Made by a program: the position numbers and the translations under genes
The notes under the pieces: generated by a model
The model's input: only the letters and a program-made list of their open reading frames with translations
What the model was told of the DNA's origin: nothing
Databases searched by the model: none
Origin: Macrostomum lignano
Taxonomy: Eukaryota
Assembly (NCBI GenBank): GCA_002269645.1
Contig: NIVC01000884.1
Span: 331,616 to 395,615 of the forward strand
Direction: 5' to 3'
DNA length: 64,000 bases
Part shown: in pieces, positions 4,199-47,320 of the stretch
Position numbering within the stretch: position 1 is the stretch's first letter
How the letters are laid out: the number at the start of each line of letters is the position of its first letter

Positions 4199-14894
<10,696 letters not shown>

Positions 14895-22750: not shown

Positions 22751-24034
22751 TCAGGTTATACGATAATTAGCATAGGCCCTGTTCTCTTCGCATGTTTTGT
22801 GCAATTGCAATTTGGCGTGCACAGCTTTGCCTTCATTGTTGCTGGCATTCACCAGCTCCCTGGCCAGCGAGCGGTACAGGTGCTCCTTGGTGCCGCGAAC
22901 GTTTGACGCAATTCGCAGAAATTTAAACGCTCGCATTTGACTCTCCGACTCGCGCAGCGGGCAGGGCACTTTGTATAGGAAGCCGCCGCGAAACACGTGC
23001 TTAATGATGAGCAGAGGTGAGCAGTTCTCAACGGCTTTGTGTATGACGCGAGTGGGGTCCACCTGCAGCGATGGTGAGACTTAGTTAGTGGAATTCTATG
23101 GCTGTAGAAAGACCGGGGATCTGGGAGGCTGGCCCAGCAACTAAGGATCTGGGAGGCTGTCTCAGCAGCTGAGGATCTGGGAGAGCGGTGGCCCAGGAAC
23201 TAAAGATCTGGGAGGCTGTCTCAGCAGCTGAGGATCTGGGAGAGCGGTGGCTCAGCAACTAAGGATCTGGGAGGCTGTCTCAGCAGCTGAGGATCTGGGA
23301 GAGCGGTGGCCCAGCAACTAAGGATCTGGGAGGCTGTTTCAGCAGCTGAGGATCTGGGAGAGCGGTGGCCCAGCAACTAAGGATCTGGGAGGCTGTCTCA
23401 GCAGCTGAGGATCTGGGAGAGCGGTGGCCCAACAACTGAGGATTTGGGAGAGCGGTGGCCCAACAACTGAGGATCTGGGAGAGCAGTGGCCCAGCAACCC
23501 AGGATTTGGGAGGCTGGCCCAGCAGATCAGGATCTATTTGGTTGGGAAGATCTCGAAGGATTTTCCTACACCCAAAGATTTCCAATCCCAGAGTGAACTA
23601 GCCTCAATGGACGCTTTCTCCTCAGGCGGCGCGGCGTTTCGCCGGGCCATCTGGATGTGCTTGATCTCTGCCATCATCTGGGTGAACACGTCGCGCAATT
23701 TGTCTCGCTGGCCGCATTTGACAAAGTGTCCAGCAAAGCTGTTTACAATAGGATCGTAGTGCACGCTGAATATCTGGTACTTGCCAGGCGGCCGGACAGC
23801 TTTAGTCCGACGCTCGTCAGTTTTGGGAATGTGCCGCGTGAACAGGTGCGGGTCCGGGTCGGTCTTGGTCCATTCCGGAAACGGGCCGCGCTTGCGAACT
23901 TTCTGTAGAGGCGATTTGTGCCGCACCGGCTGCTGGCTGAGAATGGCGGCGGCGGCAGCGGTTGTTGCGGCCGAGCCCGAGCGAGACTGACAGCCTAGCA
24001 GGCGGCTGGCATAGCCCAGTAGCAGCTGGGACAT
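22751..24034 (-). CDS. MRPS7: Mitochondrial ribosomal protein S7 (uS7m); exons 24034-23603, 23062-22751, with a GC-AG intron
   Basis: DPIVNSF, EEKASIE|VDPTRVIHKAVENCSP, YKVPCPL, LHKTCEENRAYANYR (uS7 motifs); N-terminus resembles a basic presequence. Confidence 0.9.
23115..23525. repeat. 28/30-bp family minisatellite in the MRPS7 intron
   Basis: Alternating variants of the CAGCAACTGAGGATCTGGGAG unit. Confidence 0.92.
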
Positions 24035-24437
24035 TTATCTCGGTTGTACCTCCGAATCGTTGTTTTTGTCTAGCTTATAGCTTGAGAATGGCTGCTCAGC
24101 CGAGAATGCTAGAATAATAATTAGTATGTTATTAATTAGTAGCTTTATTAACAACATTAATAGTAAAAATCAAACATTAATTATATGCTAATTGAAAGAA
24201 ACATTTTTGTATTCAAATATATCAATAAGTAATGAACGATAAGCGTGTTTATTTTTTAATACAATTCACACTTAATTAGAATGCTAAGCTTGATATTAGT
24301 AATTACAAGATATAAAGCATTGAGACAATAAATAAAGTATTACTAAGGGTCACCGGAAGGTCAAATCGTTAGGGGACCAATCATGCAGAGAATAATGAAT
24401 AAGAGATGTGAGCACAGTGTGAGACAGCGAAACTGAG

Positions 24438-27400
24438 TCACTTGAGTCCAATACCAAAGTTAATAGCTAGCAGCAGTTTAGCGGTATCCTGCTCATTGCT
24501 ACGCATAGTCTGGTTCCGCTCCGACTGCTCATTCTCAAAGTCAGGCCTGGCCTGTTTCAATGAATTCAATGCGGTCTCGGCCGCTTTACGCATCTGCTCG
24601 GACGTTCTCGGCTGAGCTTCAATGTTAGTGCCGGATTTCTGAAACTCGTTGCGCCTGTGCTCAACGCTCAGGTCGAGTTTAGTTCGCAGATAGTGCGGCA
24701 CACTGTCGTGATTAAGCAGGCCGAGACGGCCTTCTGTGTGGTTCAACAGGTGCTGATCGAGCTGCGGACTCAGGCCAATTGGTAGTAGAGCGAAATCATT
24801 TAAACGAAGCTGCTTCTCGTTGCGCAGGGTGCGGTGCAGGGCGGAGAGCTGGGAGACGCACTCGGCCAGGCAGTTCAGAATCTGTAGTTGGCGATTTGTT
24901 TGGCGTTGTTGAAGACAAAATTTATCTGACACTTGCTTCACCTCAGTAATTTAAATAAGTTTGAAACATCAGAATCTGACAACCTCAGAGAGAATCTGAC
25001 AACCTCAGAGAGAATCTGACAACCTCAGAGAGAATCTGACAACCTCAGAGAGAATCTGACAACCTCAGAGAGAATCTGACAACCTCAGAGAATCTGACAA
25101 CCTCAGAGAGAATCTGACAACCTCAGAGAGAATCTGACAACCTCAGAGAGAATCTGACAACCTCAGAGACAGAATCTGACAACCTCAGAGACAGAATCTG
25201 ACAACCTCAGAGACAGAATCTGACAACCTCAGAGACAGAATCTGACAACCTCAGAGACAGAGTCTGGCAACCTGAGAGAGAGAATCTGACAACCTCAGAG
25301 ACAGAATCTGACAACCTCAGAGACAGAATCTGACAAACTCAGAGACAGAATCCGACAGCCTCAGAGACAGAATCTGACAACCTCAGAGACAGAATCTGAC
25401 AACCTCAGAGACAGAATCTGACAACCTCAGAGACAGAGTCTGGCAACCTGAGAGAGAGAATCTGACAACCTCAGAGACAGAATCTGGCAACCTGAGAGAG
25501 AGAATCTGACAGCCTCAGAGACAGAATCTGACAACCTCAGAGACAGAATCCGACAGCCTCAGAGACAGAATCTGACAACCTCAGAGACAGAATCTGACAG
25601 CCTCAGAGACAGAATCTGACAACCTCAGAGACAGAATCCGACAGCCTCAGAGACAGAATCTGACAACCTCAGAGACAGAATCTGACAACCTCAGAGACAG
25701 AATCTGGCAACCTGAGAGAGAGAATCTGACAGCCTCAGAGACAGAATCTGACAGCCTCAGAGACAGAATCCGACAGCCTCAGAGACAGAATCTGACAACC
25801 TCAGAGACAGAATCTGACAACCTCAGAGACAGAATCTGACAACCTCAGAGACAGAATCCGACAGCCTCAGAGACAGAATCTGACAACCTGAGAGAGAGAA
25901 TCTGACAGCCTCAGAGACAGAATCTGACAACCTCAGAGACAGAATCCGACAGCCTCAGAGACAGAATCTGACAACCTCAGAGACAGAATCTGACAACCTC
26001 AGAGACAGAATCTGACAAACTCAGAGACAGAATCTGACAACCTCAGAGACAGAATCTGACAATCTCAGAGACAGAATCTGACAACCTCAGAGACAGAATC
26101 TGGCAACCTGAGAGAGAGAATCTGGCAACCTGAGAGAGAGAATCTGACAGCCTCAGAGACAGAATCTGACAACCTCAGAGACAGAATCCGACAGCCTCAG
26201 AGACAGAATCTGACAACCTCAGAGACAGAATCTGACAACCTCAGAGACAGAATCTGACAAACTCAGAGACAGAATCCGACAGCCTCAGAGACAGAATCTG
26301 ACAACCTCAGAGACAGAATCTGACAACCTCAGAGACAGAATCTGACAATCTCAGAGACAGAATCTGACAACCTCAGAGACAGAATCTGACAATCTCAGAG
26401 ACAGAATCTGACAACCTCAGAGACAGAATCTGGCAACCTGAGAGAGAGAATCTGACAACCTCAGAGACAGAATCTGACAACCTCAGAGACAGAATCTGAC
26501 AACCTCAGAGACAGAATCTGACAACCTCAGAGACAGAATCCGACAGCCTCAGAGACAGAATCTGACAACCTCAGAGACAGAATCTGACAATCTCAGAGAC
26601 AGAATCTGACAACCTCAGAGACAGAATCTGGCAACCTGAGAGAGAGAATCTGACAGCCTCAGAGACAGAATCTGACAACCTCAGAGACAGAATCCGACAG
26701 CCTCAGAGACAGAATCTGACAACCTCAGAGACAGAATCTGACAACCTCAGAGAAAGAATCTGACAATCTCAGAGACAGAATCTGACAGCCTCAGAGACAG
26801 AATCTGACAACCTCAGAGACAGAATCTGACAACCTCAGAGACAGAATCTGGCAACCTGAGAGAGAGAATCTGACAGCCTCAGAGACAGAATCTGACAACC
26901 TCAGAGACAGAATCCGACAGCCTCAGAGACAGAATCTGACAACCTCAGAGACAGAATCTGACAACCTCAGAGACAGAATCTGACAAACTCAGAGACAGAA
27001 TCCGACAGCCTCAGAGACAGAATCTGACAACCTCAGAGACAGAATCTGACAACCTCAGAGACAGAATCTGACAACCTCAGAGACAGAATCTGACAACTTC
27101 AGAGACAGAATCTGACAATCTCAGAGACAGAATCTGACAACCTCAGAGAGAATCTGACAACCTCAGAGACAGAATCTGACAACCTCAGAGAGAATCTGAC
27201 AACCTCAGAGACAGAATCTGACAACCTCAGAGAGAGAATCTGACAGCCTCAGAGACAGAATCTGACAACCTCAGAGAGAGAATCTGACAACCTCAGAGAG
27301 AATCTGACAACCTCAGAGACAGAATCTGACAACCTCAGAGAGAATTTGACAACCTCAGAGACAGAATCTGACAACCTCAGAGAGAATCTGACAACCTCAG

Positions 27401-28098
27401 AGACAGAATCTGACAACCTCAGAGAGAGAATCTGACAGCCTCAGAGACAGAATCTGACAACCTCAGAGAGAATCTGACAACCTCAGAGACAGAATCTGAC
27501 AACCTCAGAGAGAATCTGACAACCTAAGAGAGAATCTGACAACCTCAGAGACAGAATCTGACAACCTCAGAGAGAATTTGACAACCTCAGAGACAGAATC
27601 TGACAACCTCAGAGAGAGAATCTGACAGCCTCAGAGACAGAATCTGACAACCTCAGAGAGAGAATCTGACAACCTCAGAGACAGAATCTGACAACCTCAG
27701 AGACAGAATCTGACAACCTCAGAGACAGAATCTGACAACCTCAGAGACAGAATCTGACAACCTCAGAGAGAATCTGACAACCTCAGAGACAGAATCTGAC
27801 AACCTCAGAGACAGAATCTGACAACCTCAGAGACAATCCGACAACCCTTAGTTAGCCAGGGAAATCGAAACCACATGACAGACAAGCGCAAACAAAGAAT
27901 CAGGACAATTGCCGCCAGTCACCTTACCTCAGGCCAGGTGGCCGGACGCTTCTCGTCAACTTTAGCAATCAAGGAGCACAGTGTTCGCCGAATACCGCGC
28001 AGTCGGTCGATCAGCTCGTCAAGACAATCGTCCGAGCCGCGATTTCCGCCGCCGCCTTCACGACCGGCCAGCTGTTGATGCTGGAACGGATCCGCCAT
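24438..28098 (-). CDS. MED8: Mediator subunit 8; exons 28098-27928, 24881-24438 (204 aa)
   Basis: LDELIDRLRGIRRTLCSLIAKVD-TWPE|ILNCLAECVSQLSALHRTLRNEK, LPIGLSP-TEGRLGLLNHDSVPHYLRTK and LLAINFGIGL match the MED8 family pattern. Confidence 0.88.
24970..27838. repeat. 20/22-bp minisatellite AGAATCTGACAACCTCAGAGAC, about 130 copies, filling the MED8 intron
   Basis: Tandem array with recurring variant blocks (higher-order structure). Confidence 0.97.
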
Positions 28099-29387
28099 CG
28101 ACGCCCTGCTGCTGCTGCTGCTCCTGCTGCTCCTGCAGTTGCTGATTGGCCTGTCTAGTTAGCAACCGATGCCGCTTAGGTATATAGTGCTGCCAATGCA
28201 ATAGGATCTGCTCGTCAACTTCCCTAGCTAGGCCTGTTTTAGCGATGTCTTTGCGAAACTGCTGATGCTGCAGTAGATCCAGCAGCTGCAGACAGAATGG
28301 GTACTTGATGTACTTGACGTAGTCCGCCTCTTTCCAGTACTGCAGGTAGCTTAAGTAGTTGATGAATTCGCGTTTCTCAAAGAAGCGACGCTGGGCTAAG
28401 AAGTTCAGGTAATTCGGATTGCCCAGGCACTGGACGAACTCTAGTTCAACCTGCGGGGTGGGATGTGGTTGGGATGAATAAACATAGGCTGTTTAATCCT
28501 TTGTGTATCCATAGTTAGATGGGCGATTTTATGGGATAGATGGGCGATTCTATGGGGTAGATGGGCGATTCTATGGGGTAGATGGGCGATTCTATGGGGT
28601 AGATAGGCGATTCTATGGTATAGATAGGCGATTCTATGGTATAGATGGGCGATTTTATGGGATAGATGGGCGATTCTATGGGATAGATGGGCGATTCTAT
28701 GGGATAGATGGGCGATTCTATGGGATAGATGGGCGATTCTATGGGATAGATGGGCGATTCTATGGGATAGATGGGCGATTCTATGGTATAGATGGGCGAT
28801 TTTATGGGATAGATGGGCGATTCTATGGGATAGATGGGCGATTCTATGGGATAGATGGGCGATTCTATGGGATGATGGGCGATTCTATGGAGTAGATGGG
28901 CGATTCTATGGGGTAGATAGGCGATTCTATGGTATAGATAGGCGATTTTATGGGATGGATGGGCGATTCTATGGGATAGATGGGCGATTCTATGGTACAG
29001 ATAGGCGATTTTATGGGATCTATGGGCGATTCTATGGGGTAGATGGGCGATTCTATGGGGTAGATGGGCGATTCTATGGTAGAGATAGGCGATTTTATGG
29101 GATGGATGGGCGATTTTATGGGATGGATGGGCGATTCTTTGGGATAAATGGGCGATTCTATGGGAAAGGGATATGTATTCTGTTCCACAGGTTACAGCGG
29201 CCACCTGTACCCAAGTAGGTATTACCTGAAAGCGCTGTCGCTCTTCGTTATCAGCTCGAGTCTGCTGCAACAGCTGATGCTGGTGGTGCTGATGATGCTG
29301 GAGGCTGGCAGCGGCGGCTGCGGCGGAGAAGTGCGACGTCGGCAAATTGGAATGCGGCGGTAGCGGTGGCGGCTGGTTGGGCTTCAT
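28058..29387 (-). CDS. MED31: Mediator subunit 31; exons 29387-29226, 28450-28058 (184 aa)
   Basis: RFQ|VELEFVQCLGNPNYLNFLAQR, YLQYWKEADYVKYIKYPFCL and DEQILLHWQHY are SOH1/MED31 motifs. Confidence 0.95.
28515..29165. repeat. 21-bp minisatellite ATGGGCGATTCTATGGGATAG in the MED31 intron
   Basis: About 31 copies. Confidence 0.95.
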
Positions 29388-32190: not shown

Positions 32191-32351
32191 GATTGAATTC
32201 TAGCTGTGAGACTGCGGCTGCCGATTGAGTATAGTAGTAATATAGCGGTCTCAGTGCAGAAATGTGAGCGAACACATTTTGATAGAGCTACAGGTTAGTG
32301 AGAATAAGGAGCATTGCACATGGCTTAAGGGGTAGACGATTATCTAGATGA

Positions 32352-33005
32352 AGGGGGGGACTTCTGTTGGGGAATGGCTGAAAGGGGGAATTCTGTTGGG
32401 GAATGGCTGAAAGGAGGAATTCTGTTGGGGAATTGCTGAAAGGGGGAATTTTGTTGGGGAATGGCTGAAAGGGGGAATTCTGTTCGGGAATGACTGAAAG
32501 GGGGAATTCTGTTGGGGAATTGCTGAAAGGAGGAATTCTGTTGGGGAATGGCTGAAAGGGGGAATTCTGTTGGGGAATGGCTGAAAGGAGGAATTCTGTT
32601 GGGGAATTGCTGAAAGGGGGAATTCTGTTGGGGAATTGCTGAAAAGGGGAATTCTGTTGGGGAATGGCTGAAAGGATGAATTCTGTTGGGTGATTGCTGA
32701 AAGGAGGAATTCTGTTGGGGAATGGCTGAAAGGAGGAATTCTGTTGGGGAATTGCTGAAAGGGGGAATTTTGTTGGGGAATGGCTGAAAGGGGGAATTCT
32801 GTTCGGGAATGACTGAAAGGGGGAATTCTGTTGGGGAATTGCTGAAAGGAGGAATTCTGTTGGGGAATGGCTGAAAGGGGGAATTCTGTTGGGGAATGGC
32901 TGAAAGGAGGAATTCTGTTGGGGAATTGCTGAAAAGGGGAATTCTGTTGGGGAATTGCTGAAAGGGGGAATTCTGTTGGGGAATGGCTGAAAGGGGCAAT
33001 TCTGT
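32352..33005. repeat. 29-bp G-tract minisatellite GGGGAATTCTGTTGGGGAATGGCTGAAAG
   Basis: About 22 copies. Confidence 0.95.
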
Positions 33006-33711
33006 TGGGGGAATGGTTGAAGGAGATTCTGCAGAGGGAGTTATGGTGATATTTTTCTAAAGCATGGTTTTGAGGCGGTTCTTTTAATTAAAAAGAATAT
33101 TAGAGACTCTAATAGTTAAGTCCTTAATTATGGCCTAGTAGGCTTATTGATCTCAGTTAGGACACGAGAAAAAATAAAAAAAAGCATCGCAAAATGAACA
33201 CTAGATACGACAGACATGAAGAGAAATTCAGCGGAATTCCAAGGGTCAGTATTAAATATTTTATTTGATTAGTTTAATTTTTGTTTCGTAATATAGTTGC
33301 CGTGAATTATACATTTTTGGTTGAGCTAATAGTTAATAGAAAATAAAAAAATTACAGCGTAGAAGCGCGACGAGCATGCTACTTACAGTAATATAAATTG
33401 ACAGCATTGTCCATAAACGTGGCTATTTAAGGTTATAACAATTGACGGCAGCCAATGAAACTTCATAAATAAACTGTTTATTACTAATATTAAGAGAAGG
33501 CAGTATTGCCTACCGTGTAACAGACCAAAAAGTTTAATTAGTTAACTAAATAACTTGAACAGACACTTTATTCTTACACAACCGGGTCATAGTGCGGCAT
33601 TGCGAAATTATGACTCCGATTTAATTAATTATATAATAAAGTAATAATAATGACAACGACAAAGCCGACGGCTACTATTATTCCAGCCAGATAAAAACGC
33701 TACCAAGGGTC

Positions 33712-40578: not shown

Positions 40579-47320
<6,742 letters not shown>

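What the first reader, a model, noticed from the sequence alone, without database searches (positions are those of the whole stretch)
27928..29387. Two Mediator subunits, MED31 and MED8, overlap by 41 nt on one exon in different frames
Seen in sequence: MED31 exon 2 reads ...QQQQQ-GVDGGSVPASTAGRS-TGA, with the stop at 28060-28058. The MED8 ATG at 28098-28096 lies inside it in the +1 frame, and its ORF ends at a perfect donor (GAG|GTAAGG, 27928) that splices in frame to the rest of MED8. The +1 frame is open from about 28160. There is no intergenic space for a separate promoter or polyA site. Established: MED31 (middle module) and MED8 (head module) belong to the same complex and are normally separate genes. 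Inferred options: a bicistronic mRNA with leaky scanning or re-initiation; a programmed +1 frameshift giving a MED31-MED8 fusion; or trans-splicing inside the MED31 coding exon. For the last option, a CTAAC branch-like motif lies near 28160, and the acceptor TCCGTTCCAG| at 28081 would put a leader-terminal AUG in the MED8 frame. That would make the two proteins mutually exclusive products of one pre-mRNA.
Basis: partly seen in the sequence, partly recalled or inferred. Interest (0 to 1): 0.87.

Follow-up and report, generated by a model that had tools for sequence, protein, structure and literature searches.

The report
Overlapping MED31–MED8 bicistronic flatworm gene
In the flatworm Macrostomum lignano, the genes for two Mediator subunits (MED31 and MED8) share one transcript and their coding regions overlap by 41 bases, a real and conserved arrangement that is an unusually tight case of the polycistronic gene organisation already known in this animal.

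Summary
On the minus strand, MED31 (29387-29226 + 28450-28058, 184 aa) ends 41 nt after the MED8 ATG (28098), which lies in the +1 frame. One detail needed fixing: MED8 exon 2 starts at 24881, not 24941.

The window is Macrostomum lignano (last 64 kb of NIVC01000884.1). This animal uses spliced-leader (SL) trans-splicing and has published operons.

- **Not an artefact.** All three assembled copies keep the overlap. A spliced RNA contig from a diverged relative (dS about 1.7) carries MED31 and MED8 contiguously with a 35-nt overlap in the same +1 frame.
- **Operon context.** NCBI locus tags place MED8, mRpS7 and METTL14 in one transcriptional unit.
- **No 3' end for MED31.** No AATAAA/ATTAAA occurs between the MED31 stop and the MED8 3'UTR.
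- **AUG-free ORF1.** No ATG occurs in any frame in the 511 nt between the two start codons, in both species.

Best reading: a mature bicistronic mRNA, with MED8 reached by leaky scanning. SL trans-splicing at an acceptor inside MED31 exon 2 is a live rival or a parallel route. A +1 frameshift fusion is not supported. This is a new example of a known kind and of moderate interest. MED31 is un-annotated in M. lignano except inside a chimeric four-gene model.

The parts
29226..29387 (-). MED31 coding exon 1 (ATG 29387-29385; 54 codons; donor CAG|GTAATA)
   Evidence: The same exon junction (RFQ|VELEF) is seen in the spliced contig L003.
28451..29225 (-). MED31 intron, mostly a 21-bp tandem repeat (28516-29165, 31 copies)
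   Evidence: Intron length differs among the three genomic copies (775, 733, 383 nt).
28058..28450 (-). MED31 coding exon 2 (Med31 domain, Gln-rich tail, TGA 28060-28058)
   Evidence: PF05669, E=6e-37
28058..28098 (-). 41-nt overlap of the MED31 tail (frame 0) and the MED8 start (frame +1)
   Evidence: The equivalent overlap in L003 is 35 nt.
27928..28098 (-). MED8 coding exon 1 (ATG 28098-28096; 57 codons; donor GAG|GTAAGG)
24882..27927 (-). MED8 intron (3046 nt), filled by a 22-bp unit x 133 (24970-27846)
24438..24881 (-). MED8 coding exon 2 (acceptor ctacag|ATTCTG; stop TGA 24440-24438)
   Evidence: The spliced product is identical to NCBI PAA75450.1 / P0123.
24248..24260 (-). First canonical poly(A) signals downstream of the MED31 stop (ATTAAA 24260-24255, AATAAA 24253-24248). 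They lie in the MED8 3'UTR.
28133..28138 (-). Candidate SL acceptor CTGCAG|, 26 nt downstream of the CTAAC at 28162-28158. An SL-AUG here would be in the MED31 frame. The site is lost (CTGCTG) in genomic copy L005.
28081..28086 (-). An SL-AUG here would be in the MED8 frame. The site is not present in L003.
22751..24034 (-). Next cistron of the same transcriptional unit: mitochondrial ribosomal protein S7 (exons 24034-23603 and 23062-22751), 404 nt downstream of the MED8 stop. METTL14 follows further downstream.
   Evidence: exact match to PAA75449.1; the locus tag shares the Mlig030536 prefix with MED8 and METTL14

Best explanation
MED31 and MED8 are two overlapping cistrons of one RNA polymerase II transcription unit of Macrostomum lignano. 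The unit continues into mRpS7 and METTL14 and is an SL-type operon.

The MED31-MED8 junction differs from the downstream junctions. It has no intercistronic spacer and no poly(A) signal. MED31 must therefore be translated from a mature, cis-spliced mRNA that also carries the whole MED8 ORF and ends at the MED8 poly(A) site near 24250.

On that bicistronic mRNA, some scanning 40S subunits pass the MED31 AUG (cacAUGa). They meet no other AUG in any frame for 511 nt and initiate at the MED8 AUG, 41 nt before the MED31 stop. One promoter and one mRNA would then deliver both Mediator subunits in a ratio set by the leakiness of the first AUG. SL trans-splicing at an acceptor in MED31 exon 2 may additionally release a monocistronic MED8 mRNA.

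Shown here: gene identities, the overlap, its conservation, the absence of a poly(A) signal, the absence of AUGs, and the shared transcriptional-unit names.

Inferred: that the bicistronic RNA is the mature MED31 mRNA, and that leaky scanning is the route to MED8.
For: - **Organism and context.** An SR-protein ORF matches NIVC01001170.1 of GCA_002269645.1 exactly. L004 on NIVC01000884.1 is identical to the window. Papers identify this assembly as M. lignano, with 30-39% of genes SL trans-spliced, about 7% of transcripts polycistronic and about 15% of genes in operons.
- **Co-transcription downstream.** MED8, mRpS7 and METTL14 carry the same transcriptional-unit prefix in their NCBI locus tags: Mlig030536 g3/g8, g5/g9, g7/g6/g1, and Mlig020072 g2, g3.
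- **Co-transcription of MED31 and MED8.** Logan contig L003 from a related species holds both ORFs contiguously. Both introns are removed, and the overlap is 35 nt in the +1 frame.
- **Conservation.** Between the two species dS is about 1.7 and dN/dS about 0.09-0.10 for both genes. The three M. lignano copies are all intact.
- **No 3' end for MED31.** No AATAAA or ATTAAA lies on the minus strand between 28497 and 24260. MED8 and mRpS7 have one 177 and 97 nt after their stops.
- **AUG desert.** There are 0 ATG in 511 nt. Dinucleotide shuffles give a mean of 4.9 and P(0)=0.003. Coding sequence elsewhere in the window has 0.83 ATG per 100 nt, giving a Poisson P(0)=0.014. L003 has 0 in 498 nt (P=0.04). 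With the protein held fixed and codons resampled, P(0) is 0.14 for the window and 0.11-0.20 for L003. Only 4 of 120 MED31 homologues lack an internal Met.
- **Start codon.** The MED8 genomic start ATGGCGGA is conserved, and the deposited protein starts there.
- **Annotation hint.** MED31 is absent as a separate protein from every source. This fits a transcript model on which only the longer ORF (MED8, 204 vs 184 aa) was kept. This last step is inference.
- **Precedent.** A weak ORF1 context plus under-representation of AUGs is the experimentally validated signature of leaky-scanning bicistronic mRNAs (PMC11892635).
Against: - No RNA-level data for M. lignano itself could be reached. The mature bicistronic mRNA is inferred from sequence and from one contig of another species.
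- L003 could be a cis-spliced but not yet trans-spliced precursor. It could also be an assembly path joined through overlapping mature mRNAs.
- The AUG desert is only moderately significant once the protein sequence is held fixed. One control CDS in the window (the SR protein, 507 nt) also has no internal ATG.
- The initiation-context consensus of M. lignano is unknown. mRpS7 also has T at -3, so calling the MED31 AUG weak rests on the vertebrate rule.
- The animal's default way of expressing a downstream cistron is SL trans-splicing. Five consensus acceptor motifs lie in MED31 exon 2.
- The control set for AATAAA/ATTAAA as the poly(A) signal here is small. The SR gene has none within 1.5 kb of its stop, probably because of a 3'UTR intron.
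Confidence: 0.5

Rival explanations
1. Operon resolution by SL trans-splicing inside the MED31 coding exon. The primary transcript would be processed in one of two ways. Either it stays whole as MED31 mRNA, or it receives the 35-nt SL at an AG in MED31 exon 2, which destroys the MED31 ORF and yields a monocistronic MED8 mRNA. MED8 protein would come mainly from the trans-spliced form. In a sub-variant, the acceptor is TTCCAG| at 28081 and the SL's terminal AUG is the MED8 initiator, giving MHQQLAGRE...
For: - M. lignano trans-splices 30-39% of its genes and most conserved genes. Downstream operon genes are SL-spliced. The SL ends in AUG and the acceptor consensus is [T/C]TNCAG.
- MED8 is named as a separate gene of a multi-gene transcriptional unit.
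- Motif matches lie at 28340, 28286, 28268, 28133 and 28081.
- CTAAC at 28162-28158 lies 26 nt upstream of the 28133 acceptor.
- At 28081 the SL-AUG is in the MED8 frame.
- Internal SL acceptors inside coding sequences, and operons without intercistronic sequence, are documented in flatworms, C. elegans and Ciona (PMC12582326).
Against: - No SL reads could be examined.
- The 28133 site is lost in genomic copy L005 (CTGCTG), and neither 28133 nor 28081 is conserved in L003.
- Every motif site except 28081 puts the SL-AUG in the MED31 frame. That creates an upstream ORF across the MED8 AUG, so leaky scanning would still be needed.
- The deposited MED8 protein starts at the genomic ATG upstream of 28081 and is not flagged partial.
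- Trans-splicing alone does not explain why the whole MED31 ORF is free of AUGs, or why MED31 lacks a poly(A) signal.
- If TBONE had cut the unit here, a 3'-partial MED31 protein would be expected in NCBI. None exists.
Confidence: 0.35
2. MED8 has its own promoter and capped transcription start inside the MED31 gene (intron or exon 2). The two genes would then merely overlap as independent transcription units.
For: Same-strand overlapping transcription units occur in compact genomes. The MED31 intron and exon 2 offer about 1.1 kb upstream of the MED8 ATG.
Against: - The intron is almost entirely a 21-bp satellite of variable length among the copies.
- A contiguous MED31-MED8 RNA contig exists in the relative.
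- The locus sits in an annotated polycistronic unit.
- MED31 would still lack a 3' end of its own.
Confidence: 0.06
3. A programmed +1 ribosomal frameshift at or before the MED31 stop (antizyme-like, UCG-UGA-A) makes a MED31-MED8 fusion protein.
For: The +1 frame is open from 28158, and a +1 slip at the UGA would enter the MED8 frame in both species.
Against: - MED8 keeps its own conserved AUG and N-terminus.
- The codon before the stop is not conserved (UCG vs CCG).
- There is no unusual RNA structure (z = 0.32).
- The lengths of the overlap and of the MED31 tail differ between the species (41 vs 35 nt, with a roughly 66-nt tail insertion).
- The only fusion protein in databases (A0A1I8I420) is a gene-prediction chimera that also swallows mRpS7 and METTL14.
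Confidence: 0.02

Closest known systems
SL trans-spliced operons / polycistronic transcriptional units of Macrostomum lignano (Wudarski et al. 2017, PMC5730564; Ustyantsev & Berezikov 2021, PMC8629364)
   Same: Same organism. The genes are tightly packed on the same strand and are conserved housekeeping genes. The downstream part of this very unit (MED8-mRpS7-METTL14) is named as one transcriptional unit in the deposited annotation. The MED8-mRpS7 junction looks canonical: poly(A) signal, AT-rich spacer, then an acceptor before the ATG.
   Different: The MED31-MED8 junction has a negative intergenic distance (-41 nt, against a published mode of about +100 nt). The upstream gene has no poly(A) signal. 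The upstream ORF is AUG-free. None of these features is part of the described operon architecture.
Operons without intercistronic sequence: C. elegans SL1-type operons and Ciona intestinalis operons (as summarised in PMC12582326)
   Same: There is no spacer between cistrons. Making the upstream mRNA and trans-splicing the downstream one would compete for the same RNA.
   Different: In those operons the upstream poly(A) site directly abuts the acceptor and the coding regions do not overlap. Here no poly(A) signal precedes the junction, and the two ORFs overlap by 41 nt.
Leaky-scanning bicistronic nuclear mRNAs, e.g. green-algal bicistronic loci (PMC11892635). From my own knowledge, not tested here: MOCS2A/MOCS2B with overlapping ORFs in animals.
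   Same: Two full-length conserved proteins lie on one mRNA. ORF1 has a poor initiation context by the vertebrate rule. There are no AUGs between the ORF1 and ORF2 start codons. The two proteins belong to one complex or pathway.
   Different: Translation of ORF2 from the bicistronic RNA is not demonstrated here. ORF1 is long (184 codons). The host also has SL trans-splicing as an alternative route.
Chimeric gene models produced from flatworm operons (PMC12582326)
   Same: UniProt A0A1I8I420 fuses MED31, MED8, mRpS7 and METTL14 into one 1171-aa protein. This is exactly the kind of annotation artefact described for operons.
   Different: Here the predictor also had to invent a 7-nt intron (GTTCCAG) to get across the frame change caused by a genuine CDS overlap.

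Membership tests
MED31 (Pfam PF05669) and MED8 (Pfam PF10232) | Significant match to the family profile over the whole domain | tested here: met
   Med31 scores 126 bits (cut-off 25). Med8 scores 98 bits (cut-off 28.3). Human and mouse MED8 chains in PDB match at E=5e-16. MED31 is 51-59% identical to MED31 proteins of many animals.
SL-resolved operon of M. lignano | Adjacent same-strand genes less than 1 kb apart (repeat-adjusted), transcribed as one unit | tested here: met
   MED31/MED8 are -41 nt apart and MED8/mRpS7 are 404 nt apart. MED8, mRpS7 and METTL14 share a transcriptional-unit prefix. A contiguous MED31-MED8 RNA contig exists in a relative.
SL-resolved operon of M. lignano | The downstream cistron's mRNA carries the 35-nt SL, joined at a [T/C]TNCAG acceptor upstream of its start codon | not testable with these tools
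   Motif matches exist at 28133 and further upstream, but no RNA-seq reads or SL track could be accessed. Supplement searches found nothing.
SL-resolved operon of M. lignano | The upstream cistron has its own cleavage/polyadenylation signal before the downstream acceptor | tested here: not met
   No AATAAA or ATTAAA lies between 28497 (inside the MED31 intron) and 24260.
Leaky-scanning bicistronic mRNA | No AUG in any frame between the ORF1 and ORF2 start codons | tested here: met
   There are 0 in 511 nt in all three M. lignano copies, and 0 in the 498 nt available in L003.
Leaky-scanning bicistronic mRNA | Sub-optimal initiation context at the ORF1 AUG | tested here: inconclusive
   The context is cacAUGa, with no purine at -3 and no G at +4. 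This is weak by the vertebrate rule, but the species consensus is unknown, and mRpS7 has T at -3.
Leaky-scanning bicistronic mRNA | Both ORFs present on one mature, polyadenylated mRNA, with ORF2 translated from it | not testable with these tools
   There is only indirect support: the L003 contig and the lack of a poly(A) signal.
Programmed +1 frameshift (antizyme type) | A conserved shift site at the ORF1 stop with a downstream stimulatory structure, and no independent start for the second frame | tested here: not met
   UCG-UGA in M. lignano against CCG-UGA in L003. The fold z-score is 0.32. A conserved MED8 AUG is present.
SL1-type / Ciona-type operon (no intercistronic region) | The poly(A) site of the upstream gene directly abuts the trans-splice acceptor of the downstream gene | tested here: not met
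   No poly(A) signal lies in MED31 exon 2 or in the overlap. The coding regions overlap rather than abut.

The most novel reading that the evidence does not exclude
An obligately bicistronic animal nuclear mRNA encodes two subunits of the Mediator complex in overlapping frames. The 184-codon upstream ORF has been kept free of every AUG across saturating synonymous divergence. Ribosomes therefore reach MED8 by leaky scanning, in an animal that could have used SL trans-splicing instead. The MED31:MED8 output ratio would be hard-wired at the level of start-codon choice.
Probability: 0.4. Interest if true: 0.6.

Novelty: new member of a known kind. Interest (0 to 1): 0.45.

Why it matters
Three consequences follow if the reading holds.

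1. **A test case in a tractable animal.** It would show how an operon-bearing animal expresses two cistrons that have no spacer, by leaky scanning, by trans-splicing inside a coding exon, or by both. M. lignano has stable transgenesis, so start-codon context and AUG-insertion experiments are feasible.

2. **Coupled synthesis of two Mediator subunits.** MED31 belongs to the middle module and MED8 to the head module. Coupling their synthesis on one RNA has not, to my knowledge, been described. The arrangement is old enough (dS about 1.7) to be under selection.

3. **An annotation repair.** MED31 is missing from the deposited M. lignano protein sets. It appears only inside a chimeric 1171-aa model labelled METTL14. 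Comparative studies could therefore wrongly score MED31 as absent. The same overlap problem may hide other genes in this genome.

Tried and rejected
- **Exact look-up of the spliced MED31 protein.** The protein was later shown to be absent from the collection.
- **Look-up of the raw MED8 exon-1 ORF.** Not on record.
- **Gene-level SL or operon tables.** No paper holds both gene names with 'dicistronic', no paper names Mlig030536 or Mlig020072, and run SRR30276804 is not cited anywhere. The supplements of PMC5816591 and PMC8629364 hold no entry for these genes.
- **More relatives.**
  - A profile search with MED8 found only distant homologues beyond L003.
  - Two of their contigs (L006, L007) have unrelated neighbours and no MED31.
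  - A JGI metagenome scan by protein pattern and one by a conserved MED31 DNA word both found nothing.
- **Met-free MED31 homologues as further cases.** P0012 and P0052 lie on bicistronic-looking marine metatranscriptome contigs. Their second ORF is not MED8, and their MED31 CDS contains out-of-frame ATGs. They serve as negative controls for the AUG-desert test.
- **AUG desert taken at face value.** This was tempered. With the protein held fixed, P(0) is only 0.14, and an SR-protein CDS also has none.
- **Kozak argument.** This was downgraded because too few local genes are available to define a consensus.
- **RNA structure in the overlap region.** A stimulatory or IRES-like structure was looked for and none was found.
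- **SL RNA gene in the window.** None.
- **Brute-force mRpS7 splicing.** The search with 2-4 introns was ambiguous. The single GC-AG intron solution matched the database exactly.
- **Assembly indel.** Rejected.
Full report
**What is there**

On the minus strand, MED31 is encoded by two exons, 29387-29226 and 28450-28058. They are separated by a 775-nt intron that is almost entirely a 21-bp tandem repeat. The 184-aa product matches Pfam Med31 at E=6e-37. Its reading frame ends ...QQQQQGVDGGSVPASTAGRS-TGA at 28060-28058.

The MED8 ATG is at 28098-28096, one base out of register (+1). The two coding regions therefore overlap by 41 nt. MED8 exon 1 ends at a GAG|GTAAGG donor at 27928.

The acceptor is ctacag|ATTCTG, and the first exon base is 24881. 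The resulting 204-aa protein is identical to NCBI PAA75450.1 and scores better against Pfam Med8 than the longer alternative. The 3046-nt MED8 intron is a 22-bp unit repeated 133 times.

**Whose genome it is**

An intronless SR-protein ORF in the window has an exact match on GCA_002269645.1. Papers identify that assembly as the Mlig_3_7 assembly of the flatworm Macrostomum lignano. Locus L004 (NIVC01000884.1) is base-for-base identical to the window across the region. The coordinates show that the window is the last 64 kb of that contig.

This changes the question, because the animal's gene organisation is already described:
- 30-39% of its genes receive a single 35-nt spliced leader, CGGTCTCTTACTGCGAAGACTCAATTTATTGCATG, which ends in AUG.
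- The acceptor consensus is [T/C]TNCAG.
- About 7% of assembled transcripts encode two or more proteins.
- About 15% of genes are assigned to operons, with a modal intercistronic distance of about 100 nt (PMC5730564, PMC8629364).

**Artefact or real**

The assembly holds three copies of the locus: L002, L004 and L005. All three give an intact MED31 (184, 184 and 182 aa), the same 41-nt overlap and the same +1 relation. L005 differs only by in-frame 3-nt deletions and a few substitutions. A one-base assembly error is therefore excluded.

A Logan contig from run SRR30276804 (L003, 1160 nt) comes from a different species. Its MED31 is 78% and its MED8 76% identical at the protein level. Between the two species dS is about 1.7 and dN/dS about 0.09-0.10. 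L003 contains the 3' 530 nt of MED31 and all of MED8 as one continuous sequence with both introns removed. In it, MED31 stops at 531-533 and the MED8 ATG is at 499, again in the +1 frame, so the overlap is 35 nt. The arrangement is therefore real and old, and both genes are under purifying selection.

**The transcription unit**

Downstream on the same strand lie mRpS7 and METTL14. The mRpS7 ATG is at 24034, 404 nt after the MED8 stop. I reconstructed the mRpS7 product with a single intron, and it matches NCBI PAA75449.1 exactly.

The deposited locus tags share a transcriptional-unit prefix across these unrelated genes. MED8 is Mlig030536g3/g8 and Mlig020072g2. mRpS7 is Mlig030536g5/g9 and Mlig020072g3. 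METTL14 is Mlig030536g7/g6/g1. According to the naming rule in PMC5730564, this means they were assembled as one polycistronic unit.

The MED8-mRpS7 junction looks like a textbook operon junction. ATTAAA and AATAAA lie 177-184 nt after the stop. An AT-rich spacer follows, and then a pyrimidine-rich ...ttattattctag| acceptor about 75 nt before the ATG.

**How the MED31-MED8 junction differs**

1. There is no canonical poly(A) hexamer on the minus strand between 28497 (inside the MED31 intron) and 24260 (the MED8 3'UTR). MED8 and mRpS7 have one within 200 nt of their stops. The SR gene has none within 1.5 kb of its stop. A GTAAGG about 95 nt after its stop, followed by a satellite and then AATAAA at 33625, suggests a 3'UTR intron. 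If MED31 is expressed at all, which its dN/dS says it is, its mRNA most probably runs through MED8 to the MED8 poly(A) site.

2. In the spliced RNA there is no ATG in any frame in the 511 nt between the MED31 and MED8 start codons. This holds in all three copies. Dinucleotide-preserving shuffles give a mean of 4.9 and P(0)=0.003. The ATG density of other coding sequence in the window gives a Poisson P(0)=0.014. L003 also has none in the 498 nt available (P=0.04).

   The signal is weaker than it first looks. With the protein held fixed and codons resampled, P(0) is 0.14 for the window and 0.11-0.20 for L003. One control CDS, the SR protein, also has no internal ATG. Two points work in the other direction. 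Synonymous sites are saturated between the two species, so the two codon-level results are nearly independent. Only 4 of 120 MED31 homologues lack an internal methionine. Two of those four were checked and do contain out-of-frame ATGs. Overall I rate the AUG desert as a moderately strong signal, of the order of 1e-3 to 1e-2.

3. The MED31 AUG context (cacAUGa) has neither a purine at -3 nor G at +4. The local consensus is unknown, so this counts for little.

4. The MED8 start ATGGCGGA is conserved between the species.

A weak ORF1 context plus under-representation of AUGs before ORF2 is the signature that was validated experimentally for leaky-scanning bicistronic mRNAs in green algae (PMC11892635).

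**The trans-splicing alternative**

Five [T/C]TNCAG motifs lie in MED31 exon 2, at 28340, 28286, 28268, 28133 and 28081.

- **28133.** This site is 26 nt downstream of the CTAAC, which is a good branch-point distance, and 35 nt upstream of the MED8 ATG. However, it is CTGCTG in copy L005 and is absent from L003.
This is the only site at which the SL's AUG falls in the MED8 frame. Three points count against it. It lies in a 9-nt stretch that L003 lacks. The CTAAC is 78 nt upstream of it. The deposited, non-partial MED8 protein starts at the genomic ATG upstream of it.
- **The other sites.** At each of them the SL-AUG would open a MED31-frame upstream ORF across the MED8 AUG, so leaky scanning would be needed anyway.

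Trans-splicing inside coding sequences and operons without spacers are both documented (PMC12582326). No reads were available to me. I therefore keep this as a strong rival, or a parallel route, at 0.35.

**Other alternatives**

- **+1 frameshift fusion.** This is disfavoured. MED8 has its own conserved AUG. The pre-stop codon is not conserved (UCG vs CCG). The MED31 tail length is variable. The fold z-score is 0.32.
- **Independent promoter.** This is disfavoured. It would have to sit in a variable satellite intron or in a coding exon, and it would not give MED31 a 3' end.

**Annotation by-product**

No MED31 protein of M. lignano exists as such in NCBI, UniRef or the other sources searched. 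It appears only as the N-terminus of UniProt A0A1I8I420. That entry is a 1171-aa 'METTL14' model that fuses MED31, MED8, mRpS7 and METTL14. It crosses the frame change with an invented 7-nt intron, GTTCCAG. This chimera is the kind of artefact reported for flatworm operons.

The absence of even a partial MED31 entry in the RNA-seq-based NCBI annotation fits a transcript model that carries both ORFs, on which only the longer one (MED8) was kept. That step is inference.

**Verdict**

The locus is an unusually tight junction inside an already described kind of polycistronic unit. The most likely reading (0.5) is a mature bicistronic mRNA with leaky scanning to MED8, and trans-splicing inside the MED31 exon is the main rival.

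I file it as a new member of a known kind, with interest 0.45. The decisive data, SL-read and poly(A)-end tracks for this very assembly, already exist publicly but could not be reached with these tools.

Noticed in passing
window 28081-28087 (-); protein P0148 = UniProt A0A1I8I420: The only database protein containing M. lignano MED31 is a chimeric 1171-aa model labelled METTL14. It fuses MED31, MED8, mRpS7 and METTL14, and it bridges the MED31-to-MED8 frame change with an invented 7-nt intron (GTTCCAG). MED31 is otherwise un-annotated in this species.
   Followed up: yes
window 24882-27927 (-), repeat array 24970-27846: The MED8 intron is a 22-bp unit repeated 133 times. It contains 116 copies of CAGATTCT, the same 8 bases that span the authentic exon-2 acceptor junction (CAG|ATTCT at 24882/24881). 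The intron therefore carries more than 100 look-alike acceptors. The array may have arisen by amplification of the acceptor region.
   Followed up: partly
window 28516-29165 (-); L002, L005: The MED31 intron is a 21-bp satellite (31 copies). Its length differs among the three genomic copies (intron 775, 733 and 383 nt). The MED8 gene span also differs (3661, 2369 and 1448 nt). Intron satellites are the main difference between the paralogous copies.
   Followed up: partly
window 23063-23602 (-): The single mRpS7 intron has a GC-AG boundary (gag|GCTAGT...CTGCAG|gtg). No equivalent GT-AG placement gives the same product, and the spliced protein matches NCBI PAA75449.1 exactly.
   Followed up: yes
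L005 about 9266-9270 (third genomic copy): In copy L005 the last base of MED31 exon 1 is A instead of G (CAA|GTAATA vs CAG|GTAATA). This is a synonymous change that weakens the donor. This copy also lacks the CTGCAG motif at the position equivalent to 28133.
   Followed up: partly
L008 (JGI 3300018974), L009 (JGI 3300018901), L010 (Logan ERR1712126): In marine metatranscriptome contigs of unidentified eukaryotes, MED31 is followed on the same RNA by an unrelated second ORF. In L009/L010 it is phosphomevalonate kinase, 36 nt downstream. In L008 it is a 159-aa ORF, 82 nt downstream. MED31 thus seems to sit repeatedly as the first cistron of bicistronic or operon RNAs.
   Followed up: partly
window 6603-7721 (+): An intact-looking 372-aa mariner/SETMAR-type transposase ORF.
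   Followed up: no
window 8982-13078 (+) and many other places (e.g. 8071-8868, 9388-10214, 11410-12513, 32340-32999, 44285-45859): A dynamin gene lies on the opposite strand, with introns filled by short tandem repeats. Long pseudo-ORFs made of minisatellites are scattered through the whole window, which fits the repeat-rich M. lignano genome.
   Followed up: no
window 35518-33600 (-): The SR-protein gene (CDS 36122-35616) has no poly(A) hexamer for about 2 kb after its stop. A GTAAGG about 95 nt after the stop, followed by a satellite and then AATAAA at 33625, suggests a repeat-filled 3'UTR intron.
   Followed up: partly
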